Below are positions 11,601-59,328 of a DNA stretch of 60,744 bases, one piece after another. Under the pieces are notes generated by a model. It had not been told where the DNA came from and searched no databases. It saw only the letters and a list, made by a program, of their open reading frames with translations. Location of the stretch: assembly GCA_002269645.1 (NCBI GenBank), contig NIVC01002788.1, positions 1-60,744 of the forward strand. Direction: 5' to 3'. Source of the stretch: Macrostomum lignano. Its lineage: Eukaryota. Position 1 is the stretch's first letter. The number at the start of each line of letters is the position of its first letter. Both the position numbers and the translations under genes were made by a program.

Positions 11601-14600
11601 CGTCGTCGGTTGGCGCGGGGTCGAACTCGCGCAGCACGCGGATCCGAACGCGGCGCGGGGCGGCCCGCAGCGCCTCCACGCAGTCCTCGTGACGCATCCG
11701 GGATACGTCGGTGTCGTTGACGGCCAGCAGGCGGTCGCCCGGGCGGAGAACCCCGTCTGACAGGGCCGGGTCGCGCACGATGCTGCGGATGTAGCAGCCG
11801 CCCGTGGTGTCCTGGCCGCCTGCGACCAGGAAGCCCAGGCCGCCGCCGCTGACCTCGTCCTGCATGAGGATGAATGAGAATGCGCTTGAGTACAGACCAA
11901 CACAGACATTGAGCACTGCAGACCTTGAGCATCACAGACCTTGAGCATCACAGACCTTGAACATCAAGGAAATGAAAAGCCCACAGCTTTAGGCCAGGAC
12001 ACTTTGTACAATTGAAATCAGCACACACCTTGTACAGCACCATCACACACCTTGTACAGCACCATCACACACCTTGTACAGCACCATCACACACCTTGTA
12101 CAGCACCATCACACACCTTGTACAGCACCATCACACACCTTGTACAGCACCATCACACAACTTGTACAGCACCATCACACACCTTGTACAGCACCATCAC
12201 ACACCTTGTACAGCACCATCACACACCTTGTACAACACCAGCACACACCTTGTACAGCACAGTCTCCACCAAGTCAGGCGCCTCCTTGGCGTCGATCTCA
12301 GCCAACCGTCGGGTCATTCGATCGATCAGCGAGTCCTCGTCTATCGACGTAGACAGCCGCAGAGAGTCAGTGGTCGGCGCACCTGCCGCCGACGCCTCCT
12401 CAGTGGGCTCTGGGCTGAGCAGCAGTGGCACCCGGGGGCGTGCGATGTACAACCGCATGGGACTCGGCGCCGACCGCAGCATGGCAACAATGTCGCCGTG
12501 GCTCCGGCCGTACACCGGCTGATCGGCGATCTCCAGCAGCAGGTCGCCCTCCCGCAGCAGCCGCTGCACGGACTCGTGGCTGTGCTCCAGCACGCGCTTC
12601 ACTCGGCCAAAGTGGCGCAGCGTCGAAACTCCGGCAAGGCCGTCGTCAGAAGAGACGCTGTCCCCGGCGCCAGATGTTGAGATGCCGGGATGGTAGCCGC
12701 CTGACACCTGCCCGGTATGATAGATTTCATTAATTTTCTAATCAAAAAGTTTGTGAATAATTCATAAGAAGATGGCCAGATGCCAACTTTTTAAAAGCAA
12801 AGAGCAAAGAATCATTTACTAGTATATAGATAACCATAGGGAAATTATCGATGACGTAATTTGCTATTTTTAGAACGAAACATCCATTCTATTTTTAGCT
12901 ACAAAAAGGTCAATTTCATGATGACGTAAGTTGCTATTTTTAGAACGAAAAAGCTATTCTATTTTTAGCTACAGATGGGTCAATTTTATGATGATGTAAG
13001 TTGCTATTTTTAGTTATAGACCAATCAATAGATGATGACTTATATTGCTAGTTTTAGAAGAAGAAAAACTGCATTTTTCAACCGGCCTAATAAATCAGTA
13101 CCTGAATGCCCACACTGCCACCGTCGGTCTTGTACACCGTAACCGGCAGGCAGTCGCAGTGGCTACTCAGCTGGGGGAAGGCCTCTTCAAGCCGTTTCCG
13201 GCCGGCCAGAACGGAGGCCGAGTCCAGCAGGCTGGAGTCCGGCGAGCCGACGCTGACGCCGACGCCTCCGCTGCCAACGCCGCCGAGGCTGTCACCGCCG
13301 TCTTCCGTTGTTGTCGGACTATCGGGCGGCGGCGGCAGCGCCTCGGGCGGCTGCGAGGACTGGCCGCGCTGCAGGTGGAACACGGAGATCTCCGGGGCGG
13401 ACAGCAGCGTCTCCATGGCAACCTTGTGCGTCACCCGTTCCAAGCTGACGCTGTTCACCCACAGTATTTTGTCGTTGATACGCAATCGGGCGTCCAGATC
13501 GGCGGCGCCGCCTTTGGCGATGGACTTCACGTAGATGGCGCCACCCTCCAGGTTGGTGTTGGTGCCACCCTGCAGATGATTGATGGGGCTTCTATCTAAC
13601 TTCATTGCAAGCCCAACCAGTTAGAATAAGTTTCGCATTCTTTACTTTTTTACTGTACGTCTTATTCTAAGAAAATTGCCACTCACCCAGACGTAAAAGC
13701 CGAAGCTGTCGTCCTTCTTCCTCAGCGTGACCTTGAATCGGTCGCCGGGCAGCAGGTCCCGGACGCCGCCGCTGCTCACTCGGCTGAGCTGAGAAGCTTT
13801 CCTATCCAGCTCCAGCTGGTGCCTGCTCTTCACGATGATCGTGTCCTGCGTGGAGGCCGTGCCCTCCGAGGAGCCTGGCGCAGTATGGGGGTTGGCGGAC
13901 TGTGAAGAGTCACTTAATCACTCATTTACTCATTTACTCACTCACTCATTCACTCTCTCATTCATTCACTCACTCACTCACTTACTCACTCGCTCAATCA
14001 CTGACTCGCTCACTCAATCACTCACTTATTCACTCACTTAATTAGTCAATCACTCACTCACTCACTCACTCACTTGCTCACTCAATCACTCACTCACTCA
14101 CTCACTCACTCACTCACTCACTCACTCACTCACTCACTCACTCACTCACTCACTCACTCACTTACTCGCTCACTCACTCACTCGCTCACTCACACTCACT
14201 CACTCACTCACTCACTCACTCACTTCACTCACTCACTGACTCACTCATTCGCATTCGCTCACTCACCGCCATCATCGTCGCCCGGCCCGGCCACGGCAGG
14301 CGTGACAGTGAAGGTGGGCAGCGTGGGATTGGAGGCCCATCGCCGCCCGCTGCCGCCAGCCCCCGGAGTCAGTTTAGTCGGCGACGCGGAAGTTGCAATC
14401 TGCGGCGGCGGCGGCCGGAGCGGCGGCACCGGCTTCGTGAACGCAAAGCCGACGGCGCCCGCCATCTCCTGGTCCTCGGCGCCACCGGCATCATCCGGTG
14501 ACGTCAGGTCAAAGATGTCGCTGAGGCTGCCCGAGGCCCCCGCGCCGCGGTCGAGCCGTCTGGAGCGGCGCCTACGCTGCGGCGACCGGCGGTCCTGACG

Positions 14601-17600
14601 TCGCCGACGGGCCGACGAAGCCGTGTCGTCGTCTTCAGCCTCAGCCTCGGCGCCGCCGCCGTCGGAGCTGTAGGAGGCGGAGCCGGACGAAACTGTCGGC
14701 GCGCTGCCACCGCCGGCGCCTACGCTGTCCATGTGCAGGCGCGCTAGGCCGGAGCTGTCGGTGGCTGCCGACACCGGGTTGACGTCGTCATCAACATCCT
14801 CGCCGTGCACGAATGTGTCGCTGTTGTCGCCGAGGCGACTCAGCATCGAGCGAACGCGGACGGTCGAGACGGCGGCGTTGGCTGCGCCGGAGGTCGCCTG
14901 GGGCCGGCTGTGCCGCAGTCTCGGCTGAACCGCCACCGAGGAGCTGAGAAAAAGTGAGTGAGTGAGTGAGTGAGTGAGTGAGTGATTTAGTGAGTGAGTG
15001 AGTGATTGAGTGAGTGATTGAGTGAGTGAGTGAGTGAGTGAGTGAGTGAGTGAGTGAGTGAGTGATTGAGTGAGTGAGTGAGTGATTGAGTGAGTGAGTG
15101 AGTGAGTGAGTGAGTGAGTGAGTGAGTGAGTGAGTGAGCGAGCGAGTGAGTGGGTGAGCATCGACAATCATGTTTTTTTTCCGAGTAAGATAAAACTTGC
15201 GAAGCCAACACATTCATCAGAAACTTTATGGGGTTTAAAATGCGATTCAAAAATACCTATTAGTAATGAACTGATATGTTAAGGTATAGATACGATGACT
15301 GTAAGATAGATTTGATTTGATTTGACCACTGTAGCATCTGCAACTCCTTGGCAAGCATTGAAGCTTCACTAAAAAGCACTGGAAGCTTCCCCTAGTAACA
15401 CCGATGCTACCTTAGCAACCGGTAACCAATCAAAAAGCCGCAAACCTGGCTCTAGCAGGTCCAGAAGCCACCATTCGCTGCTGCTGCCCCTGCCCAGTAC
15501 CGCCGCCTCCGCTGCTCAGAGTCTGCGAAGCCCAGCGCTGCACGCCGCCGGTCGCGGACTCGGACAGCTCCGGCCAAGAGGCGCTCATCCGGCCGGACCA
15601 GTCGTGCAGCTGGCTGCACAGCGCCGCCAGATACTTGCCGAGTTTGGCGCCGCTCAGCTGGAAGTTCAGCCGGCCCAACTCGCGGCCGTTGACGCGCAGC
15701 GAAGTTGTGGAAGCTACGACTAGCTTGGCGCCTTTGAAGGACACCTTCTCGGCGTCCTGCCAGGCCAGGCGGTGCAGCGGCGGCGACACCGGCTGGCGGC
15801 GGCGGCTGCCCGAGTCCCCAGCCGCCCTGGCCACCAGGAGGCCGCGCAGCGACACTCCGAGCAGCAGGGGGGCTGCAGGCTCCGTGGCGGAGGCGGCGCC
15901 GGCCATGGCGAACAAATGGAATCCGTAATGAGGCAGCGCCATCGCGGCCATGCAGAATTGGCGACCGCTGAGCGCGCGCGACGAAGCGTTGAACGTCGAG
16001 ACGCGACGCCATTCGTTGACGAGTTTTGCTGAGAGATCCGCCTGCTGCTGCTGCTCGAGCAGTGACTTCGGCATGTACTGCTCAAGTCTGGTGGTTATTT
16101 TAGGTACATGCAGGCTTACCGACTGATGGTTACGTCAGTTAACTAGCTTACCAACTAATGATGACGTAAAAGGATTTAGTTAGAAGCTAGCTAACTCACG
16201 GAAGATGACGTAGGTGGCTATTTTTAGAAACTAGCTTATAAACTGATAATGACGTAAGTGGCTATTTTTAGAAACTAGCTTATTAACTGGTGATGACGTA
16301 AGTGGCTATTTTTAGAAACTAGCTCATAAACTGGTAATGACGTAAGTGGCTATTTTTAGAAACTAGCTCATAAACTGGTAATGACGTAAGTGGCTATTTT
16401 TAGAAACTAGCTTATTAACTCGTGATGACGTAAGTGGCTATTTTTAGAAACTAGCTTATAAACTGGTAATGACGTAAGTGGCTATTTTTAGAAACTAGCT
16501 TATTAACTGGTGATGACGTGGGCGGCTACTTTTAGAAACTTGATTAACAAAAACAACGCCTTCAAAACTTACTTGAAGGGGGGAGCGGCCGTGCCGTCTT
16601 CTGCCGCTGACGGCGCAGGGGCCGCGCCCAGCTCCTGGTGCAGCGCCAGGCCGGCCAGCTGGATTGCGGCCGCCTCTTCAGCTGGCAGCGTCGCATCAAG
16701 CAGGGCTCGACGAAGCAGCAGGTAGAGCAGACGGCGGGAGCCGGCGCTGTTTGTGCGGGCGGGAGGGTGGGCTGCTGTGACTTCTGAGTTAGCGAATTGA
16801 GGCTGTAAGCGAAATATCATTTGTCACTCTTGAGCCTTTCATTTTGTCACTCTCCTTTCACTCTCAATCTCAAGTCTTAGAGCTTGCCTTAGTAACCCTT
16901 GAAGATGCCCCTAGCGACCCTTTGATCTTCACTTAGCAACCCTTTGAGCATTCCCTAGTAACCATTTGATCTTCACTTAGCAACCCTTTGAGCATTCCCT
17001 AGCAACCATTTGATCGTCAAGCAACCATTTGATCGTCAAGCAACCCTTTGAGCATTCCCTAGCAACTCTTTGAGCATTCCCTAGCAACCATTTGATCTTC
17101 CCTTAGGAACCCTTGGAGCATGCCCTAGCAACCATTGGATCTTCACTTAGCAACCCTTGGAGCTTCCCTTAGCAACCCTGGGGGCATTCCCTAGCAACCA
17201 TTGGATCTTGATCACTTAGCAACCCTTAAAGCATGCCCTAGCAACCATTTGATCTTCCCTTAGCATCCTTGGAGCTTCCCCTAGCAACCTTTTCATCTTC
17301 CCTTAGCACCCTTAGAGCATGCCCTAGCAACCGTTTATATTCCCTTAGCAACCCTTGGAGCATGCCAAAACAAATTTAATTGTCTTCACCCTTTGTCATA
17401 TGCAATTGCAGCTTATCACACTCTTCCTTTTTCACTCAAAACGATTCAACGAGCTGCCGGTCACTCACGGCACCAAATCGACGCTCTCAGGATAAAATTT
17501 GAGTCGCAGCGTGAGCTGCAGCAGGGTGCCACCGCGGCCGCCGCCTCCTTCGCCGCCGCCACCGGCCCCACCGCCAGATCTTTTCAAAGAGGCGGAGCGC

Positions 17601-20600
17601 GAGGACACGCTGAGCCAGTCTTTGGGCGCCTGTTTGGCCATGCGGACGTTCTCCAATATGAATCGGTTTTCGCCGTCTAAAATAAAAAAATATGTCAATA
17701 TTCGCATATTCGAGTTTGCTACTATTAGTAATAGAAATAAGATAAACGTTTTTTTGACATCTATCAGCCACTATCGTCCTCACCAACTAGCATGGTCAGT
17801 CCCAGCAGGTGGTCGATGCCGGAATTGACGTAGTCAAACACGCAGCGGATGAGCTCGCGGCCCAGAGTGTTGGCCGAGCAGGTCAGGGCGAGCCTCTCGC
17901 CAGTCGGTAGGTGAACTCTGACCTCCCTGTTCAGTTTGTTCTGATCTCGCTGTTAAGCAGATCCCAAGTTAAGCAGAGTTAATAGTGGTTAGTACACAAC
18001 TAAATGCCTTTTTTCGTCCATTAAGGAAACAGTCATAATCAATTCTACTTCTCAAACTCACCGACAATCGCAACGGAGATTTCGACGAACTCCCTGCCAC
18101 AGTGGCCGATGACGTCGATAGGGCGACAGGTGTCGGCGCGTTGCCCTGGTGGGCTGTAAATTTAGCGCCTGTGAACTCGTCGTCAAAGCCGCCGATATCC
18201 TCAGTGTCGGCCTCCAAATGGAGCAGCGAAGTGTCATCGATTGCATCGTCGTTGACGTTGAAAGCCGTGGCAGCGGCGACCGCCCCGGTGTCGACAGTCA
18301 CTGCCGCCTGCGGCTGCTGCTGTTGCTGCTGCTGTAGCGGCGGTGCCGACATCGGCAGTGTCGGCAGTCTGCGCCGCGCGCTCGGCGAAGATTTCGGCGA
18401 CGATGACGGTAGCGGCGGAGTGGGCAGCTTAGCGGGCTGCGACGAAGGCTCCGCAGCTGGGATCGGCGGTGTAAAGGCAGCCAGATCGGCGCCGGTGTCG
18501 GTGCCGACGTCCAGGGTTTGCTTCGGCGACGATTCGAGCACCAGCGGCTCGGTGGCTTCGTCGACTGTTGCGCATCTGCATGGCATAGCATTTTTTAAAT
18601 TTAGTCTTACAAATATGAACAAAAAATGCCTATTTGCCTACTTGTTTAATAAGTAGCTAAAAAGTCAAATTACTAAGAGTATTCACCTAGCCGTGACGAC
18701 CAGAGCTTCAACGGCTTGGTCTGGAATCGTTGATAGACTTGGCATATTTAGTAGACCGGAACCGCTGCTTTCCAGGGCAACTGTAGATGCGTTCAACTCG
18801 CACTGAACAGAACTGTCTGTGACTTCGGGATTCATAGGATCAGCCTTTGACTGACCGCTGCCGGCATCATCCAGCGGCATATGCGTCGGCGGTTTTGATG
18901 CTCTCGACTGTGCGTTAACTCCATAGTCTATTGAAATTCTGTAGCTGAAAAAATATTCAGCGTAAAAATAGGTAAATAGTTGGTTTGCGATTGTCATCTA
19001 CTTATAGTAGACATATTGAACATTCTTTTAACAATCGTACGAATCATGTAATAATAAATTACATCGAACTTCATTTTTTGTATCTTTGCTCACCATAGGC
19101 CACCAACTCCAGCAATTGCTCCATCAGCGAGCGCACAAGCGTAATCATACATTGTCATGAGCTGCCCATCATCCCTATTGGTCATATTGGTCTGGGACTT
19201 GTCCGGGACGTACAGTTTGTGATCAGCGATGGACACGAGTAGGTCGGCGTAGTTTGGCAAAGGACTTAGATAAGGAAAAGGAAGAAAGAAGAAAAATTAC
19301 AAGTAAATGAATTTTTACGCTATTCACGTTTTATTCTTTTTTGGCTTTGGTTGATGGCTGTGCAAACAAACAGCTTTGTTAAGTTTTTTACGCAACATAT
19401 CGGCGTCATTAAATATGAATAAAACATCAAGTTCGGCGTATTTTTCACAGAGGGGAACGAAATACGTTTGGAAAAAAATTAAAGTAAAAAAGCTTGCGTT
19501 GCTCTTGTGCGCAAAAAGGAGCTGAAGCAGCCAGGTCCCACCGAGATTCGAACTCGGGTCGCTGGATTCAAAGTCCAGAGTGCTAACCACTACACCATGG
19601 GACCTTAAACGAGCCGAAAAGACTGGAGTCTATTTAAACCCATGACGGTAGAGCAAATGAATGAGTCCCTTATAATAGCTATTCATTACTGCTCATCGAG
19701 CTCGTATTTCTACCTATTATTCTAACAATATAATCTTCTTCGACCTTCAACGAGTTCAGGATAGGGGTTAACTAAACATAATTAGATATGAATTATTCAT
19801 TTTATAATTTTCTGTTTTTTTAGTTTGTTTAGAATACGTAAACCGTAAACGTACGTTGTGTTGAAGCTACTAAAACCGTAGCTTAACGTATGAAAGATGA
19901 AGAATCATCAGTGTTGGGCAAGTTACTCAAAAAAAGTAACTTGCGTTACTGTAACTTAAGTTACCACTTTTTAAAAAGTAACTTACGTTAGCCTAGTAAC
20001 TTTGAACAAAAACCCGGTAACTTTTAAGTTACTTCCGTTACTTACTTCCGTTACCTATGTTATAAACAAAATTTTCTGCTTTTTTAACATTGCAAATGTG
20101 CTGGAACAGCACAAATGATCGCGAAAGCCAGAAGGAAAAATACAACAAAATTAATTTCAGTAACTGTATTAAATTTTAATCACTTTAGGCCCTTTCCGTA
20201 AAAAGAAGAGAAGCTGAAGGTCAGAAACGTTAAAGGCAAAACGCAATTTAATTTTTAATAACATTATAAGTTATAATACACAAGGACAACTTAACGTAAC
20301 TTCAGTTGTCCTTGATAATACATCGCTCGTAATAAGTACCTGGCTTTACTCCACTCTACAGTCTGCTTTACTAGTCTTTTTATTTTCAATTATTTGAAAT
20401 TTTTTCAATTTTTTCAATTATTTTTCAATTCATTAATATTAAATTATTGTGCAGTGCAGTGCAGTGCCAGTGGACTTTAGTGGTGTAGCCAGGGAGGCCG
20501 CCTTAACAATCGTTGGGGCGGCAACTTCACCCCACCTGCAAGACACCCCACCAGGGGGGGGTGGGGTTGGGCGTGGCGGGTGCATGAGGCATGGCCAGCC

Positions 20601-23219
20601 AGGCCAACCCGCCCCCCCCCAATTAAAATTCCTGGCTACGTCGATCACTGAGTGGATTTGTGGAGACTACAGATGAATTTCTTTCTTTGGTTGTTTGTTT
20701 CTAAGAACTAAACAAAATATTTTTATTAACTTAAAAACGAAAAGCAAAAATATTTTACCGAAAATAACAAAGTAAAAACATGTTTCAAGTATTTCTTTAT
20801 TAATTACAGCGTAATACCGTATGATATTATTCACTTAGTTTTGAATTTAAGAATGAAAAATGCTAAAAATGTGACAACTGGCGTAATAGCTAAGCATATC
20901 AGTTTTAAATTTAAATATTGCGATTGTTGCAAAGTAACTGTAACGGACTTCCGAAATTTGAGTAACTTACCGTTACTCCGTTACCAAAATAGGAAAGTAA
21001 CTTGCGTAAGGAACGCTTTACGAAAAAGTAACTTGCGTTACCATTTACAAGTTACTCGGTAACGGAAGTGCCCAACACTGAGAATCATTAACTAAAATAT
21101 GCTATAATAGGCCCGTCTCGATGGTTCATTGGTTCTTGATTAGCTGAAGCAGACGTAATTAGGTCTTCACCAATAAATGATAAAAAAACAACACTACTTC
21201 TAATCTTTTGTAAGTAGACACTGAGGACATGGCTGCTCAAAAAATATGTTGACATACTACAATATAAAAAATTACCCCTCATATGGGTCCAAACGCTTGG
21301 CGATAAAACCGGGATCGCCATTTTGATGACGCGTATCCATGGCAACTGAGGCGAATAGCGTCGACAAGGTTGGACCACAGATTTGCTGCAGATGCGGCTT
21401 GAAGTCTAAACAGGACTGAAATGTTTGTTTATTAGATAAGCTAAATAGGAAGTCCTTTGACATCACTTTCATATTGCAAATGGGTGACTTACATTGATGA
21501 AGAACTCGGCATCAAGCAGTTGGCGATTTTCAATTTCAGAGCACAGAGAAGCAATTAAAGTGTCAAGTTCGTCACTTGGAGCCTGCGACTGGGCAGAGTG
21601 GGAGAAGCATGCGGTGTAATGTGGGTTGATAGCAGGTGAGGGTATGTCTAACAGGTAAGTTACAGATTGGCGCCTATCTAACAGGTAAGTTACAGATTGG
21701 CGCCTATCTAACAAGTACGTAACATATTGGCGCCTATCTAACAGGATAGTAACAGATTGGCGCCTATCTAACAGGATAGTAACAGATTGGTGCCTATCTA
21801 ACAGGTTAGTAACAGATTGGCGCCTATCTAACAGCTAAGTAACAGATTGGCGCCTATCTAACAGGATAGTAACAGATTTGCGCCTATCTAACAGCTAAGT
21901 TACAGATTGGCGCCTATCTAACAGGTAAGTTACAGATTGGCGCCTATCTAACAGGTAAGTTACAGATTGGCGCCTATCTAACAAGTAAGTAACAGATTGG
22001 CACCTGTCTAACAGGTAAGTTACAGATTGGCGCCTATCTAACAAGTAAGTAACAGATTGGCACCTGTCTAACAGGTAAGTAACAGATTGGCGCCTATCTA
22101 ACAGGTAAGTTACAGATTGGCGCCTATCTAACAGCGGGGCTGCTCACCGCGGAAACGGCCTTCACAGCAGACAGCGTCACGCCCAGCGAGAACAGCAGCA
22201 CCAGCTCCAGGCTACGGCCGGCTGCTGACTCGCCCGAAAGCGCGGCATTCAACAGGCGGCGAAGCTCGGCCAGCGAAGGCACCTCCGGCGGCAGGTAGTC
22301 CTCCAGCTCAGGGTCGTCCGCCGAGCCGGACAGCCAGGCTCGCTCGGACAGACTGGCCGATGGCCGGTTGGAGAACTGCACCAGGCCTGAGCTGGTCAGC
22401 TCGCAGCTGTCAGGGGTGATCAGCTGGCAGCGGGGGCCTCTGGGGCTGGCTGGAGTGGTTAAGTTGGATTCTTGATTGGGCTGGGGGACTCGCTAGTTGG
22501 GTTGACTGGGAGCTGAGGGACTCGCCAGTTGGGTTGACTGGGAGCTGAGGGACTCGCCAGTTGGGTTGACTGGGAGCTGAGGGACTCGCCAGTTGGGGTG
22601 ACTGGGAGCTGAGGGACTCGCCAGTTGGGTTGACTGGGAGCTGAGGGACTCGCCAGTTGGGTTGACTGGGAGCTGAGGGACTCGCCAGTTGGGTTGACTG
22701 GGAGCTGAGGGACTCGCCAGTTGGGTTGACTGGGAGCTGAGGGACTCGCCAGTTGGGGTGACTGGGAGCTGGGGGACTCGCTAGTTGGGTTGACTGGGAG
22801 CTGAGGGACTCGCCAGTTGGGGTGGCTGGCTTGAGGCTGAGGGACTCGCCAGTTGGGTTGACTGGGAGCTGAGGGACTCGCCAGTTGGGTTGACTGGGAG
22901 CTGAGGGACTCGCCAGTTGGGGTGACTGGGAGCTGAGGGACTCGCCAGTTGGGAGCTGAGGGACTCGCCAGTTGGGAGGCAGAGGGACTCGCCAGTTGGG
23001 AGGCTGAGGGACTCGCCAGTTGGGAGGCTGAGGGGCTCGATGCGCTACAAATGTCACAGCACAGCATTCACATATGCACACAAAAGCCTTACATTTAATG
23101 ACCGGTTGCAGAGCGCAGCAGGAGCCATAGAGCAGGCACCAGAGCTCGTCCTCAGTGACGTCATTGGCCTTGTACTTTAGCAAGTCGTTCAAACTGATCG
23201 ACTGGGCAGATGACGTCAT
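5693..23219 (-). CDS. PTPN13: PTPN13/FRMPD2-family protein: KIND, FERM, four PDZ domains and a degenerate PTP domain (about 21 coding exons)
   Basis: Exons read by eye: 23219-23093, 22449-22148, 21588-21493, 21415-21276, 19264-19094, 18944-18687, 18575-18062, 17949-17784, 17676-17469, 16746-16573, 16087-15446, 14943-14267, ~13874-13687, 13569-13102, 12707-12249, 11859-11477, 11220-10977, 10778-10642, 10025-9314, 9021-8576, 5833-5693. Motifs: KIND (SLNDLLKYKANDVTEDELWCLL), FERM (KFYPESVD, LPHYGFHLF), PDZ (FGFYVWGG...AIYVKSIAKGGAADLDARLRINDKIL; GLGFLVAGG), PTP-like (REFWRRV, NLWP, SLEQYRLLY). Splice phases are consistent except for one frameshift near 10722 and an ambiguous acceptor near 13874/13898. 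Confidence 0.9.
7680..8420. repeat. 46-bp intronic minisatellite, ~16 copies
   Basis: Unit GAGGTAGCTGCAGAACGGAGGGTCCGGATTGGATAGGACAGGGTGT; the ORF translations show a 46-aa period. Confidence 0.95.
9075..9230. repeat. 22-bp intronic minisatellite, ~7 decaying copies
   Basis: Unit GATACGGAGTGACAGATGCTAA. Confidence 0.85.
10062..10380. repeat. 22-bp intronic minisatellite, ~14 copies
   Basis: Unit GGGATGTGGATTGGGAACCTTT near the acceptor at 10026. Confidence 0.95.
10820..10975. repeat. Irregular C-rich intronic repeat
   Basis: CCGTCCGCCTACC and CCACCATCCGCCCA blocks abutting the donor at 10976. Confidence 0.7.
11235..11430. repeat. Irregular G-rich intronic repeat
   Basis: GGGGTGGTGGG(TG/GT)AATT-like blocks. 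Confidence 0.7.
12025..12260 (-). repeat. 22-bp minisatellite spanning the splice donor at 12249/12248, ~10 copies
   Basis: Minus-strand unit GTGTGTGATGGTGCTGTACAAG = first intron bases plus a copy of the last 12 exon bases. Confidence 0.95.
12850..13010. repeat. Degenerate ~70-bp repeat related to the 16.2-16.5 kb array
   Basis: Three blocks of ATGA(C/T)GTAA(G/T)TTGCTATTTTTAG. Confidence 0.75.
13915..14262. repeat. (CACT)n microsatellite; reads (GTGA)n on the transcript and starts at the splice donor
   Basis: Direct reading of the sequence. Confidence 0.95.
14954..15150. repeat. (GAGT)n microsatellite; reads (CTCA)n on the transcript and ends just before the acceptor
   Basis: Direct reading; inverted relative to 13915-14262. 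Confidence 0.95.
16155..16545. repeat. 44-bp intronic minisatellite, ~9 copies, with an ATGACGTAA core
   Basis: Unit TGATGACGTAAGTGGCTATTTTTAGAAACTAGCTTATTAACTGG. Confidence 0.95.
16880..17365. repeat. ~22/44-bp irregular minisatellite with a (CC)TAGCAACC core
   Basis: About 20 TAGCAAC(C) cores separated by variable spacers. Confidence 0.9.
19533..19604 (-). tRNA. tRNA-Gln-TTG: tRNA-Gln (anticodon TTG), intronic and co-oriented with the host gene
   Basis: GGTCCCATGGTGTAGTGGTTAGCACTCTGGACTTTGAATCCAGCGACCCGAGTTCGAATCTCGGTGGGACCT: 72 nt cloverleaf with A box, B box (GTTCGAATC) and a T5 terminator about 15 nt downstream. Confidence 0.97.
19909..21080. mobile_element. Non-autonomous hAT-type DNA transposon (1172 bp)
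   Basis: TIRs CAGTGTTGGGCA...TGCCCAACACTG; exact 8-bp TSD AGAATCAT at 19901-19908 and 21081-21088; subterminal GTAAC/GTTAC repeats; no transposase ORF. Confidence 0.93.
20478..20650. mobile_element. Small MITE nested inside the hAT element
   Basis: Ends TAGTGGTGTAGCCAGG and CCTGGCTACGTCGATCACTG; flanks AGTGGACTT and AGTGGATTT (TSD with one mismatch); GC-rich against AT-rich surroundings. Confidence 0.6.
21645..22133. repeat. 30-bp intronic minisatellite, 16 copies
   Basis: Unit CTATCTAACAGGTAAGTTACAGATTGGCGC; begins about 15 nt after the donor at 22147. Confidence 0.95.
22490..23035. repeat. 32-bp intronic minisatellite shortening to 22-23-bp units
   Basis: Unit GACTGGGAGCTGAGGGACTCGCCAGTTGGGTT. 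Confidence 0.95.
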
Positions 23220-56479: not shown

Positions 56480-57122
56480 CGATCAGAAGCCAACCAGCAG
56501 CCAGCCAACCAGCAGCAAGCCAACCAGCAGCCAGTTAATCAGCAGCCAGCCAACCAGCAGCCAGCCAACCAGCAGCCACCCAACCAGCAGCCAGCCAATT
56601 AGCAGTCAGCCAACTAGCAGCCAGCCAATCAGCAGCCACCCAACCAGCAGCCAGCCAACCAGCAGCCAGCCAACCAGCAGCCAGCCAACCAGCAACCAGC
56701 CAATCAGCAGCCACCCAATCAGCAGCCACCCAATCAGTGGCCAGCCAACCAGCAGCCAGCCAACCAGCAGCCACCCAACCAGCAGCCACCCAACCAGCAG
56801 CCAGCCAATCAGCAGCCACCCAACCAGCAGCCGCCCAACCAACAGTCAGCCAACCAGCAGCCAGCCAACCAGCAGCCAGCCAATTAGCAGTCAGCCAACT
56901 AGCAGCCAGCCAATCAGCAGCCACCCAACCAGCAGCCAGCCAACCAGCAGTCAGCCAACCAGCAGCCACCCAACCAGCAGCCACCCAACCAGCAGCCAGC
57001 CAATCAGCAGCCACCCAACCAGCAGCCGCCCAACCAACAGTCAGCCAACCAGCAGCCAGCCAACCAGCAGCCCGCCAATCAGCAGCCAGCCAACCAGCAG
57101 CCAGCCAATCAGCAGCCAGCCA
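56480..57122 (+). repeat. 15-bp repeat (~43 units) abutting and in frame with the SLC25A19 ATG
   Basis: Unit CCAA(C/T)CAGCAGCCA(G/C); translates as QPTSS/QPISS. Confidence 0.95.
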
Positions 57123-59328
57123 ATGGGCGGAGGTCGTCGAGCTCCAGACGCGGTGTCGGCCTACGCCGGCTTCCTCAGTGGCGCTACGGTTCGCGCGCTG
57201 CTGCAGCCGCTGGACGTGATCAAGATCAGGTGGCAACTGCAGCTGGAGTCCATCAGCAGACGGGTGACGGCGGCACCTACCAGAGCCTGCCGCAGACTGT
57301 GGGCCGAATCCTACGGGAGGAAGGCGCTCGAGCACTGTGGAAGGGTCACGTGCCCTGCCAGGTGGTGTCGGTGCTGTTCAACTCGGTGCAGTTTTACACC
57401 TTCGAGCGCAGCGGGCCGCCAGTTCGGGAGCTTCTTGGAGGCGGCAGCGACTTTGGTGCAGACTTTGTGTGCGGCGGCATCTCTGGGGTAGCGGCGGCGC
57501 TGAGCTGCCACCCGTTCGACACCTTGCGGACACGGCTGATTGGGCAGAGCGAGAAGAACCGCGTGTACTCTGGTCTGGTGCACGCTGTGACCCACATGTG
57601 GCGGTCGGAGGGTCCGCGTGTGTTCTTCCAGGTGAGTCACTGATTAGTGTGTTTTTCCAGGTGGGTCACTGACTGGTGTGTGTTCTTCCAGGTGGGCCAC
57701 TGACTGGTGTGTGTGTTCTTCCAGGTGGGTCACTGATTGGCGTGTGTGTTCTTCCAGGTGGGCCACTGACTGGTGTGTGTGTTCTTCCAGGTGGGTCACT
57801 GATTGGCGTGTGTGTTCTTCCAGGTGGGTCACTGACTGGTGTGTGTGTTTTTCCAGGTGGGTCACTGATTGCTGTGTTCGGTCACTGAGTCAAAATTTTG
57901 TTACATAACTTCAGGGTACAATTGCATTTTCAAATCACAAATGCCAGTCAGTTTGCCTCATCAATTTCCCCGCTCCATCTGCAGGGCCTGAATTCGAATC
58001 TGTGCATGACGATGCCGCAGGCGGCTAGCCGGTTCGCCTTCTACAAGCTGCTGTTCGGCCCCCTGGCCGACCGTTCTTCGGCGTCAGCCGCGGCCGCCGG
58101 CTCCGGCTTTCTGTCCGGCGTGCTGTCCAAGGCCCTCGTCTACCCCTTCGACGTCATGAAGAAGCGCCAGCAGGTGCGCGGCTTCGAGGCCGCCCGACGC
58201 GCGTTTGGCCGCGTGCAGGTGAACATGCTGACACCCTTTAGGACTGTCTGACACCCTTTAGGACTGTCTGACACCCTTTAGGACTGTCTGACACTCTTAG
58301 GACTGTCTGACACCCTTTGGGACTGTCTGACACCCTTTGGGACTGTCTGACACCCTTTAGGACTGTCTGACACCTTTAGGACTGTCTGACACCCTTTAGG
58401 ACTGTCTGACACCCTTTGGGACTGTCTGACACCCTTTAGACTGTCTGACACCCTTTGGGACTGTCTGACACCCTTTAGGACTGTCTGACACCCTTTAGGA
58501 CTGTCTGACACCCTTTAGGACTGTCTGACACCTTTGGGACTGTCTGAAACCCTATAAAACTTTCTGACACCCTAGTTAGGACTCTCTGACACCATTTGAA
58601 CCTGTCTGACACCCCTGGCACTGTCTGAAACCTCCCTTTTAATGTCAAATGTTTCGTAATAATTTCTGACACTTTTAACACATTAATAATGTCTGACACC
58701 TCTAGGACACGTCAACTACCCAGACTGTCGCCTGACAACTCCTAACAGGTACTCCATGACACTTCAGGCTGTAGCCTAGTGTTTAGAGCGTCGGGCTCAC
58801 GACTTGAAGGTCGGGTTCGATCCCGATCGCACTGGAACAGTTTGCGTCTTTGAGCAAGACACTTAACTCTGCATTGCTTCAGTTCACCAGCTGTAAAAAG
58901 GTGCAGCATAATTGAGGGTGTGTGGCGACCCCCCAGTCCTTGGACTGAACAGCCGTACGCAGCCTTCAGATGCGCCGCGCAAAATAGCTGCGGCTGAGCT
59001 GTCGGTTGCACATCTACCCAATTAGGGCAGTTGTAATCAACTATTGTATTAATTATATTGACGCTTCAGCATATCGTCTCGCATATCTGTTTCCTCGACT
59101 ACCTCCGCCACCAATGCCCTCTCACGCACCCTACACAGCCCCCGCTCCCCGCAGGACTCGGCAGCAGCCGGACCATCGCAGCCTGCGCCTCCTTCATCTG
59201 GCGCAACGAAGGCCTTCGCGGTTCTACAAAGGCCTGGGCCCGTCAATTGCTGAAGCTGGCCTGTTCACGTCCACACTTTCTACTTCTTTGAACTTTACCG
59301 CTCGCTAATTCTGTCCGCTTTGTACTAA
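57123..59328 (+). CDS. SLC25A19: Mitochondrial thiamine pyrophosphate carrier; three exons, with three apparent 1-bp frameshifts in this sequence
   Basis: Exons 57123-57631, 57985-58218 and 59139-59328. Carrier signatures [20 protein letters not shown] and [11 protein letters not shown]; TPC-specific LWKGHVP and [15 protein letters not shown]; [13 protein letters not shown]. Confidence 0.9.
57617..57870 (+). repeat. 29-33-bp donor-spanning minisatellite forming seven GT-AG units
   Basis: Unit GTGGGTCACTGA(C/T)TGG(T/C)GTGTGTGTTCTTCCAG. Confidence 0.95.
58228..58545 (+). repeat. 20-bp intronic minisatellite, ~16 copies
   Basis: Unit CTGACACCCTTTAGGACTGT. Confidence 0.95.

What the first reader, a model, noticed from the sequence alone, without database searches (positions are those of the whole stretch)
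57632..57856. Seven back-to-back complete mini-introns in SLC25A19 intron 1 (candidate recursive-splicing / intron-birth array)
Seen: the 353-nt intron opens with units of 29, 31, 33, 33, 33, 33 and 33 nt. Each unit starts GTG(A/G)G, contains a branch-like CACTGA(C/T) and ends in a pyrimidine tract plus CCAG, followed immediately by the next GT. The unit tail GTGTGTTCTTCCAG is a copy of the end of the coding exon, so the duplication spans the donor. Established: AG|GT zero-length-exon sites underlie recursive splicing, tandem duplication across AG|GT is a proposed intron-gain route, and flatworms have a class of introns of roughly 30-40 nt. Inference: each unit may be excised on its own (ratchet splicing), or the array supplies competing donors and acceptors; retaining a 33-nt unit preserves the reading frame.
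Basis: partly seen in the sequence, partly recalled or inferred. Interest (0 to 1): 0.9.

Follow-up and report, generated by a model that had tools for sequence, protein, structure and literature searches.

The report
Minisatellite spanning a splice donor
The first intron of a flatworm (Macrostomum lignano) thiamine-pyrophosphate carrier gene opens with a tandem repeat that began as a duplication across the exon-intron border, a repeat type already known from amphioxus ("mirages") and from human F7, CBS and IFI6, and common in this repeat-rich genome, so it is real but ordinary.

Summary
Intron 1 (57632-57984, 353 nt) of an SLC25A19-like gene of Macrostomum lignano opens with units of 29, 31 and 5 x 33 nt. 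Each is GTG(A/G)G...CACTGA(C/T)...TTCTTCCAG, and each tail copies the last 14 nt of exon 1.

It is a minisatellite whose first unit spans the exon-intron boundary. All seven copies of the gene in the genome carry it, with 5 to about 17 donor sites. Unrelated genes have the same layout: a PDZ gene in this window (12022-12260, minus strand) and a GGPS1-like gene elsewhere. Tandem arrays cover 30% of the window, so random placement alone predicts such cases.

- Every unit read from exon 1 gives GTG-GGT-CAC-TGA, so a retained unit ends the protein even though 33 is divisible by 3.
- Internal donors are not conserved: 5 of 31 units in the paralog have lost the G of GT.
- The intron has a unique tail unrelated to the exons, and the joined exons read CAG|GGC, so duplication did not create it.
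- Only the 57631-57985 junction gives an ungapped carrier protein.

Recursive removal fits the sequence but cannot be tested without RNA data. This is a new member of a known kind, of low to moderate interest.

The parts
57123..57631 (+). Exon 1 of the SLC25A19-like carrier gene, from ATG (57123-57125) to ...GTG TTC TTC CAG. This copy lacks one G in the run at 57262-57264.
   Evidence: Pfam Mito_carr E=1e-21 on 57254-57631. 95% identity to M. lignano A0A1I8JBK1. The other six genomic copies have GGGG and an intact 510-nt exon.
57618..57631 (+). [quoted passage not shown] It codes (V)FFQ and resembles a polypyrimidine tract plus CAG.
   Evidence: Identical to the last 14 nt of units 2-6. TRF places the array start at 57618.
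57632..57660 (+). Unit 1 (29 nt), GTGAGTCACTGATTAGTGTGTTTTTCCAG. It carries the authentic donor GTGAGT (57632-57637), which is the best U1 match in the array.
   Evidence: Only this donor joined to 57985 gives an ungapped alignment with orthologs and matches gene models PAA70323.1 and A0A1I8GR87.
57661..57691 (+). Unit 2 (31 nt), GTGGGTCACTGACTGG(TG)3TTCTTCCAG. Pseudo-donor at its start, pseudo-acceptor at its end.
57692..57724 (+). Unit 3 (33 nt), GTGGGCCACTGACTGG... variant.
57725..57757 (+). Unit 4 (33 nt), GTGGGTCACTGATTGGCG... variant. Units 3+4 and 5+6 form a 66-nt higher-order repeat.
57758..57790 (+). Unit 5 (33 nt), identical to unit 3.
57791..57823 (+). Unit 6 (33 nt), identical to unit 4.
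57824..57856 (+). Unit 7 (33 nt), ending TTTTTCCAG.
57857..57877 (+). Partial eighth unit, GTGGGTCACTGATTGCTGTGT. It holds the last pseudo-donor and has no exon-tail copy.
57878..57984 (+). Unique 3' part of intron 1, with the real 3' splice site ...ccgctccatctgcag (AG at 57983-57984).
   Evidence: No similarity to the exons (tail 57857-57984 searched; best match 9 nt, E=0.34). Present in all type A copies.
57985..58218 (+). Exon 2, GLNSNLCMT...GRVQ.
   Evidence: Pfam Mito_carr E=1.8e-7. Colinear with orthologs.

Best explanation
The array is a junction-spanning minisatellite of the 'mirage' type.

Origin. A segment of about 29-33 bp, made of the last 14 nt of exon 1 plus the first 15-19 nt of an already existing intron, was duplicated in tandem. 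It then expanded and contracted by slippage or unequal exchange. This step is inferred from the unit structure, the 66-nt higher-order repeat and the copy-number differences.

Why each unit looks like an intron. The copied exon end is TTCTTCCAG, so each unit carries a donor, a YTRAY-like CTGAC/CTGAT and a 3'-splice-site look-alike.

Splicing. The productive mRNA joins the upstream-most donor (57631|57632, GTGAGT) to the distal acceptor (57984|57985). That this junction is the one that encodes the carrier is shown. That the cell uses it predominantly is inferred, by analogy with human F7 IVS7 and the amphioxus mirages.

Internal CAG|GT sites. They are most likely silent or low-level pseudo-sites, with one of two outcomes if used:
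- An internal acceptor regenerates CAG|GT, and the rest can still be removed.
- An internal donor joined to the distal acceptor puts GTG-AGT-CAC-TGA in frame. The transcript is then expected to go to nonsense-mediated decay.

Evolutionary side effect. The array acts as a recombination substrate between the tandem paralogs.
For: - Array structure and exon-tail identity.
- All seven genomic copies carry it with different numbers of CAG|GT sites. Type A copies have 8, 8, 9, 5 and 5. The type B paralog has about 15-17 units of 29-33 nt.
- The edge unit is the most divergent (29 nt, GTGAGT) and inner units are homogenised. Mirages show the same pattern.
- Independent cases of the same architecture exist. 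A PDZ-domain gene in this window has exon end ...CTG TAC AAG| at 12249 and a 22-nt unit GTGTGTGATGGTGCTGTACAAG x about 11. A GGPS1-like gene has a 31-nt unit x 18.8. In GGPS1 the polyprenyl_synt profile stops at position 183 at the first donor and resumes at 184 after the distal acceptor.
- Arrays cover 30% of the window, 49 arrays in all. Simple and tandem repeats are 15% of the genome (PMC5730564).
- The 57631|57985 junction aligns without a gap to Lingula, Lottia, Pteropus and Trichoplax carriers. It is the junction in M. lignano models PAA70323.1 and A0A1I8GR87.
- In-frame TGA in every unit.
- Internal donors are not constrained: G+1 is lost in 5 of 31 type B units.
- The 14-mer AGGTGGGTCACTGA comes from about 9 independent loci against about 6 expected, so the unit is local, not a dispersed element.
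- A type A copy and the type B copy are 99.1% identical over 2,160 nt, and the homology ends inside the array. Contig C1249 carries A-A-A-B at a spacing of 4,121-4,253 bp.
- Precedents: PMC1557585; PMC3087553.
Against: - No transcript, lariat or nascent-RNA data could be consulted, so the silence of the internal sites is an inference from other species and from gene models.
- In the type B paralog the first donor (GTGGGT) is no stronger than the internal ones, so donor strength cannot explain the choice there.
- The terminal AG of the unit is invariant in all 39 units tabulated. That could hint at constraint, but the numbers are small and units copy one another.
- Flatworms, reportedly including M. 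lignano, have microintrons. Excision of one or two units is therefore not physically excluded.
Confidence: 0.8

Rival explanations
1. Recursive ('ratchet') splicing. The intron is removed stepwise. Exon 1 is joined to an internal TTCTTCCAG| acceptor, which regenerates CAG|GTGGGT. That donor is used again, until the distal acceptor is reached. Units of 29-33 nt, or multiples of 60-93 nt, would be excised as mini-introns.
For: - Each internal site is a polypyrimidine-CAG|GTGGGT acceptor-donor pair with a CTGAC/CTGAT about 21 nt upstream of the AG. This is the sequence definition of a ratchet point.
- The end product is identical to direct splicing, so nothing in the protein data excludes it.
- A microintron class is reported in flatworms, including M. 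lignano.
- The AG of all tabulated units is intact.
Against: - Ratchet points are described in long introns of tens of kb and are ultraconserved. This intron is 353 nt.
- 5 of 31 internal donors in the paralog are dead.
- The other junction-spanning arrays found here do not form mini-introns. The PDZ gene's unit is 22 nt and ends AAG.
- The branch-like A lies only about 11 nt from the donor.
- The human and amphioxus analogues splice normally from the authentic site.
Confidence: 0.07
2. Competing splice sites with a regulatory or dosage effect. The repeated donors and acceptors divert part of the transcripts into stop-containing isoforms that are degraded, or they recruit extra U1 snRNP. Unit number would then tune expression of the carrier.
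For: - Eight near-consensus donors lie within 225 nt.
- In human IFI6 and CBS the first two pseudo-donors of such minisatellites are used alongside the authentic one.
- Copy number differs between gene copies.
- Any internal-donor product carries an early TGA.
Against: - There is no evidence of selection on unit number or on the sites.
- F7, LMNB2 and PDGFA use only the authentic site.
- Intron 2 of the same gene tolerates about 20 strong pseudo-acceptors, CTGACACCCTTTAG. Array-borne splice-like motifs therefore seem generally to be ignored in this genome.
Confidence: 0.1
3. Intron birth. The intron itself was created by tandem duplication across an AG|GT, following the Rogers model or the mirage model, and the array is the remnant of that event.
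For: - The intron position (FFQ|GL) has no intron in Lingula, Lottia or Pteropus orthologs. Their introns lie at about residues 44, 95, 155 and 213.
- The intron contains copies of the upstream exon end, as the mirage model predicts for new introns.
Against: - The spliced junction is CAG|GGC, not AG|GT.
- The intron start is unlike the exon 2 start.
- The last 128 nt of the intron are unique and unrelated to the exons.
- Read as ancestral coding sequence, the unit has a stop at codon 4.
- The unique tail and acceptor are present in both paralogs, whereas the arrays differ. The array is therefore secondary to the intron.
Confidence: 0.03

Closest known systems
Amphioxus 'mirage' minisatellites (Adh3, globin BflGb6 and BflGb9), as described in PMC3087553
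   Same: - Tandem repeats whose unit spans an exon-intron boundary, so splice signals are reiterated.
- Unit sizes of 10-160 bp.
- Copy number differs between haplotypes.
- Edge units escape homogenisation.
- Regular splicing is not disturbed.
- Discussed as a possible route to new introns.
   Different: - Here the organism is a flatworm.
- The unit is short (29-33 nt).
- Because the exon ends TTCTTCCAG, each unit is formally a complete GT...AG mini-intron.
- Splicing has not been assayed here.
Human F7 intron 7 37-bp VNTR, and the similar CBS IVS13, IFI6 (6-16) intron 2, LMNB2 and PDGFA minisatellites (PMC1557585)
   Same: - The first monomer spans the exon-intron boundary.
- The authentic donor is followed by 4-8 pseudo-donors, or up to 25 in IFI6.
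- The F7 donor is UGG/gugggu, like the internal CAG/gugggu here.
- The repeat number is polymorphic.
- In F7 only the upstream-most site is used, explained by 5'-to-3' scanning.
   Different: - F7 copies only 4 nt of exon, so its units do not carry an acceptor look-alike.
- Donor choice in F7 was shown with 50 minigene constructs. Nothing has been tested in M. lignano.
Recursive splice sites (ratchet points) of Drosophila and vertebrate long introns (PMC8605326)
   Same: Juxtaposed 3' splice site and regenerated 5' splice site (AG|GT).
   Different: - Ratchet points lie in very long introns.
- They are single and ultraconserved, and are flanked by a cryptic RS-exon.
- Here seven sites sit 29-33 nt apart in a 353-nt intron, and they decay freely in the paralog.
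Intron creation by tandem duplication of an AGGT-containing exon segment (Rogers model; ATP2A1 re-enactment, PMC3265369)
   Same: Duplicated sequence containing AG|GT provides splice signals. The duplicate can be removed without changing the protein.
   Different: - In that model the whole intron is a copy of flanking exon sequence and the spliced junction is AG|GT.
- Here only the 5' two-thirds is repeat, the rest is unique, and the junction is CAG|GGC.

Membership tests
Junction-spanning ('mirage') minisatellite | Head-to-tail tandem array of three or more similar units | tested here: met
   TRF: period 33, 8.1 copies, 89% matches, score 394.
Junction-spanning ('mirage') minisatellite | The first unit contains the end of the exon and the start of the intron, so the splice site is reiterated | tested here: met
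   The 14 nt of exon 1 (57618-57631) recur as the tail of each unit. There are eight CAG|GT sites.
Junction-spanning ('mirage') minisatellite | Unstable copy number, with inner units homogenised and edge units divergent | tested here: met
   5, 8, 8 and 9 sites in type A copies and about 15-17 units in type B. Unit 1 is the odd one, and there is a 66-nt higher-order repeat.
Junction-spanning ('mirage') minisatellite | Normal splicing proceeds from the authentic site | not testable with these tools
   The only support is indirect: ungapped ortholog alignment and gene models with ...VFFQ|GL....
Recursive splice site / ratchet point | [quoted passage not shown] | tested here: met
   TTCTTCCAG|GTGGGT occurs seven times. 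Definition taken.
Recursive splice site / ratchet point | Resides in a long intron (many kb) | tested here: not met
   Intron 1 is 353 nt.
Recursive splice site / ratchet point | Strong conservation of the acceptor|donor motif | tested here: not met
   G+1 is replaced in 5 of 31 units of the type B arrays, and one CAG has become TAG. Numbers are small and units are not independent.
Recursive splice site / ratchet point | Splicing intermediates (sawtooth coverage, RS junction reads, lariats) | not testable with these tools
Intron born by tandem duplication of AGGT (Rogers model) | Intron absent from orthologs | tested here: met
   Lingula, Lottia and Pteropus have no intron at this position. 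No closer outgroups were available.
Intron born by tandem duplication of AGGT (Rogers model) | The intron 3' end copies the upstream exon end, the intron 5' end copies the downstream exon start, and the spliced junction is AG|GT | tested here: not met
   The tail 57857-57984 is unrelated to the exons. The intron start GTGAGTCACTGA differs from the exon 2 start GGCCTGAATTCG. The junction is CAG|GGC.
SLC25A19 / mitochondrial thiamine pyrophosphate carrier | Mito_carr repeats and best hits to TPC orthologs | tested here: met
   Pfam PF00153 on exons 1 and 2. 40-44% identity to animal TPCs and 95% to the M. lignano TPC.

The most novel reading that the evidence does not exclude
In M. lignano, a flatworm reported to have microintrons, arrays of this kind are really processed stepwise. 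The spliceosome hops from one regenerated CAG|GT to the next, or excises 29-33-nt units or multiples of them. Junction-spanning minisatellites would then be a natural case of recursive splicing in a short intron. They would also be tolerated, and able to lengthen introns, precisely when the exon end mimics a 3' splice site.
Probability: 0.07. Interest if true: 0.7.

Novelty: new member of a known kind. Interest (0 to 1): 0.3.

Why it matters
The direct value is small. It is one more junction-spanning minisatellite in a genome that is 15-30% tandem repeat.

It has three practical uses.
- It warns annotators of M. lignano that repeated donors and acceptors at intron starts are common and can mislead gene models. 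One UniProt model of this gene skips seven residues at exactly this point.
- It offers a natural substrate for testing how a flatworm spliceosome chooses among identical sites: eight donors and seven acceptors in 225 nt, with copy-number variants among paralogs. The species can be made transgenic.
- The array marks the end of a 99%-identical block shared by two otherwise diverged tandem paralogs. This shows such repeats acting as recombination points that reshuffle 5' exons and change gene copy number.

Tried and rejected
1. Dispersed repeat family or mobile element. BLAST of the array hit arrays at seven other loci at 67-77% identity, all containing GGTGGGTCACTG-like cores. But the exact 14-mer comes from only about 9 independent loci against about 6 expected. 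Those hits are chance similarities amplified by tandem repetition. Rejected.

2. The junction sequence TTCTTCCAG|GTRRG is itself array-prone. Of 108 genomic hits, arrays occur only in the SLC25A19 and GGPS1 families, with two unexamined pairs 62 nt apart. About 30 sites are single. No clear excess.

3. Donor-like minisatellites arise at real donors. Periodic CAGGTRRGT triplets are 8 times more frequent than the reversed motif (5,321 against 648 matches). The single motif shows a ratio of 3.2. But of 16 such arrays inspected, at most one or two touch an exon end and several are antisense to the host gene. The enrichment is real and remains unexplained. One search repeated the built-in control and was wasted.

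The rate rests on the window and on flanks of fetched loci, 155 kb in all.

5. The independent ML2 assembly contig for PAA70323.1 could not be fetched.

6. Pseudogene. The window's exon 1 frameshift is a private one-base loss in a G run, absent from the six other copies. The exon 3 shifts also lie at short runs, and protein models are intact. These are most likely assembly errors.

7. RNA families. Nothing was found in or near the array.
Full report
**What is there.** Exon 1 of a mitochondrial-carrier gene ends ...CGT GTG TTC TTC CAG at 57631. The intron opens with GTGAGTCACTGATTAGTGTGTTTTTCCAG (29 nt). A 31-nt unit and five 33-nt units of the form GTGGG(T/C)CACTGA(C/T)TGG(T/C)G(TG)nTTCTTCCAG follow. 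A partial eighth unit occupies 57857-57877, and 107 unique bases lead to the acceptor ...ccatctgcag|GGC at 57984|57985. Tandem Repeats Finder scores it as one array: 57618-57877, period 33, 8.1 copies, 89% matches. The array begins 14 nt inside the exon, so the repeated segment spans the donor. The 29/31/33 lengths differ only in a (TG)n run. Units 3+4 and 5+6 form a 66-nt higher-order repeat.

**Gene and organism.**
- The whole genome behind the window is 764,410,778 bp in 5,269 contigs. That matches the published Mlig_3_7 assembly of Macrostomum lignano, 764 Mb in 5,270 scaffolds (PMC5730564).
- The conceptual protein is 95% identical to M. lignano 'mitochondrial thiamine pyrophosphate carrier' A0A1I8JBK1. 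It is 40-44% identical to animal SLC25A19 orthologs.
- Pfam finds Mito_carr in exons 1 and 2.
- The window copy has a one-base loss in a G run (57262-57264) that the six other copies lack. It has further small shifts in exon 3. Protein models from another assembly are intact, so I read these as assembly errors, not a pseudogene.

**The array across copies of the gene.** The genome holds seven copies on three contigs.
- Type A is the window's kind. It has 8, 8, 9, 5 and 5 CAG|GT sites. The first is always GTGAGT and the others GTGGG(T/C).
- Type B is a tandem neighbour whose exons 2-3 are only about 50% identical in protein. It has about 15-17 units of 29-33 nt, and its first donor is GTGGGT.
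- The array is therefore real, older than these duplications, and unstable in length.
- In the type B arrays 5 of 31 units have A or C in place of the G of GT, which makes this the most variable position of the unit head. One CAG has become TAG. The AG itself is intact in all units. I see no sign that the internal donors are maintained by selection. Units copy one another, so the counts are not independent.

**The array is not unique to this intron.**
- BLAST with the array found a 31-nt x 18.8 array in an unrelated GGPS1-like gene. Its exon ends ...CTG GGG GTG TTC TTC CAG|GTGAGACTGGG, and its unit repeats the exon's last 18 nt or so plus the intron start.
- In that gene the polyprenyl-synthase profile stops at position 183 at the first donor and resumes at 184 after the distal acceptor. 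The array units are therefore not part of the message.
- A scan of the window and fetched flanks (155 kb) found another case in the same window, on the other strand. A PDZ-domain gene has an exon ending ...GTG CTG TAC AAG| at 12249, followed by about 11 units of GTGTGTGATGGTGCTGTACAAG.
- Arrays cover 30% of the window, 49 arrays in all. They commonly start or stop within 5-30 nt of exon edges.
- With about 30 exon-like segments and 49 arrays, random placement predicts about 0.5 arrays starting in the last 20 nt before a donor. Two are seen, or one if the reported array is left out. This gives no evidence of an excess.
- Scaling from published gene numbers (72,846 genes x 4.9 introns), and halving the window's array density because tandem repeats cover 15% of the genome against 30% here, gives a few thousand such arrays genome-wide. 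This is my own inference.

**Origin of the unit.** Other arrays share a GGTGGGTCACTG-like core, but that does not indicate a mobile family. The exact 14-mer AGGTGGGTCACTGA comes from about 9 independent loci, against about 6 expected. The unit is a local product of this junction.

1. *Frame.* 33 is divisible by 3, but every unit read from exon 1 is GTG-(A/G)GT-CAC-TGA. Any mRNA that keeps a unit stops at the fourth added codon. The GGPS1 and PDZ arrays also run into stops within 2-3 units (read).

2. *Intron birth.*
   - The intron position is indeed lineage-specific. Lingula, Lottia and a bat have introns at about residues 44, 95, 155 and 213, and none at FYK|GL. M. lignano exon 1 lacks all three ancestral positions it spans, at about 44, 95 and 155.
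   - But the Rogers and mirage duplication models require an intron built from exon copies and an AG|GT junction.
   - Here the joined exons read CAG|GGC. The intron start is unlike the exon 2 start. The last 128 nt have no similarity to any exon.
   - The array was laid down in an existing intron.

3. *Recursive splicing or competing sites.*
   - Each internal TTCTTCCAG|GTGGGT fits the sequence definition of a ratchet point.
   - However, ratchet points sit in very long introns and are ultraconserved. These sit in a 353-nt intron and decay.
   - The end product of stepwise removal is the same as that of direct splicing, so protein-level data cannot tell the two apart.
   - No RNA data were reachable.

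**Most likely mechanism.**
- Shown: only the 57631|57985 junction yields a carrier colinear with orthologs. It is the junction in M. lignano models PAA70323.1 and A0A1I8GR87.
- Inferred: the upstream-most donor is chosen. In type A it is also the best U1 match. The internal sites are silent or rarely used. This is what happens in human F7 intron 7, where 4-8 identical pseudo-donors (UGG/gugggu) stay silent under a 5'-to-3' scanning rule, and in amphioxus mirages.
- If an internal acceptor is used, the donor is regenerated and the remainder can still be removed.
- If an internal donor is used, the early TGA should send the transcript to nonsense-mediated decay (established pathway; not tested here).
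- Intron 2 of the same gene carries about 20 copies of CTGACACCCTTTAG, starting 9 nt after its donor. The species evidently tolerates array-borne splice look-alikes.

**A side effect that is visible.** A type A copy and the type B copy on contig C1249 are 99.1% identical over 2,160 nt, covering the upstream region, exon 1 and the start of the array. Homology ends inside the array. Exon 1 differs by only 3-6 bases in 510 between the types, while exon 2 is about 80% identical. C1249 carries A-A-A-B at a spacing of 4,121-4,253 bp, where the window and C725 have A-B. Unequal exchange within the arrays explains this pattern (inference).

**Comparison and verdict.** The array matches every testable feature of a junction-spanning 'mirage' minisatellite, as in amphioxus Adh3 and globins and in human F7, CBS, IFI6, LMNB2 and PDGFA. 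It fails two defining features of ratchet points and the structural test of duplication-born introns. It is a new member of a known kind. The only twist is that the copied exon end mimics a 3' splice site, so each unit looks like a whole intron. I found no paper on such arrays in Macrostomum in the held library. Interest is 0.3. The recursive reading keeps a probability of about 0.07.

Noticed in passing
window 12022-12260 (minus strand); exon end at 12249: A second donor-spanning minisatellite in the same window. It lies in a PDZ-domain gene on the other strand: ...GTG CTG TAC AAG|GTGTGTG, then about 11 units of the 22-nt GTGTGTGATGGTGCTGTACAAG. Read-through reaches a TGA in the second unit.
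   Followed up: yes
L012 673-1250 (G000:C581:509972-510549); also C4090 and C986: A GGPS1-like (polyprenyl synthase) gene whose exon ends GTG TTC TTC CAG, like the carrier. It is followed by a 31-nt x 18.8 donor-spanning array, or 7.8 copies on C986. The Pfam profile is seamless across first donor to distal acceptor.
   Followed up: yes
L004, L005, L006, L003 (G000:C1249:162880-176400); L007 (C725:248552): Tandem paralogs A and B share a 99%-identical block (upstream region plus exon 1) that ends inside the array, while exons 2-3 are strongly diverged. C1249 has A-A-A-B at a spacing of 4,121-4,253 bp, against A-B elsewhere. This suggests unequal crossing-over within the array.
   Followed up: partly
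window 56488-57123: A 15-nt array (AGCCAACCAGCAGCC x 42) runs right up to the ATG at 57123. It is open in the ATG frame (SQPTS repeats). GenBank model PAA70323.1 translates it as an N-terminal extension. Whether it is 5' UTR or coding is unknown.
   Followed up: no
window 58228-58632: Intron 2 carries about 20 copies of the 20-nt unit CTGACACCCTTTAGGACTGT, starting 9 nt after the donor. Each holds a branch-like CTGAC and a Y-tract-TAG pseudo-acceptor.
   Followed up: no
whole genome G000: Minisatellites with a periodic strong donor motif (CAGGTRRGT three times at 25-39-nt spacing) give 5,321 matches against 648 for the reversed motif. The single-motif ratio is 3.2. Most of the 16 arrays inspected are not at exon ends and some are antisense to the host gene, so the enrichment is unexplained.
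   Followed up: partly
window 57262-57264; exon 3 at about 59155-59328: The window copy has a one-base loss in a G run that frameshifts exon 1. The other six copies are intact. There are several more small shifts in exon 3. These are probably long-read assembly errors.
   Followed up: partly
window, whole length: 49 tandem arrays cover 30% of the window. Introns of the large minus-strand PDZ gene are almost filled with them, and many start or stop 5-30 nt from an exon edge. Examples: (AGTG)n 14953-15158 and (TCAC)n 13910-14247, and the 30-nt array 21647-22134, which starts 12 nt after a donor.
   Followed up: partly
window 57123-59328 compared with L034, L035, L036: The M. lignano carrier gene lacks the intron positions shared by Lingula, Lottia and a bat (about residues 44, 95, 155 and 213). 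Its intron 1, at FFQ|GL, sits where none of the three has an intron. Whether intron 2 (after GRVQ) matches a bat exon boundary near residue 258 was not resolved.
   Followed up: partly
window 19532-19605 (minus); window about 58770-58900: A tRNA-Gln(TTG) gene. Separately, a tRNA-like, SINE-looking stretch in intron 2 that neither ARAGORN nor Rfam calls.
   Followed up: no
UniProt A0A1I8JBK1 (P0001) against the window at 57610-57631: This public model reads ...MWRSEVRGLNS... in place of ...[16 protein letters not shown].... Apparently a frame error in the older assembly was patched by choosing an upstream GTGTGT as donor. This is an annotation artefact at exactly this junction.
   Followed up: partly
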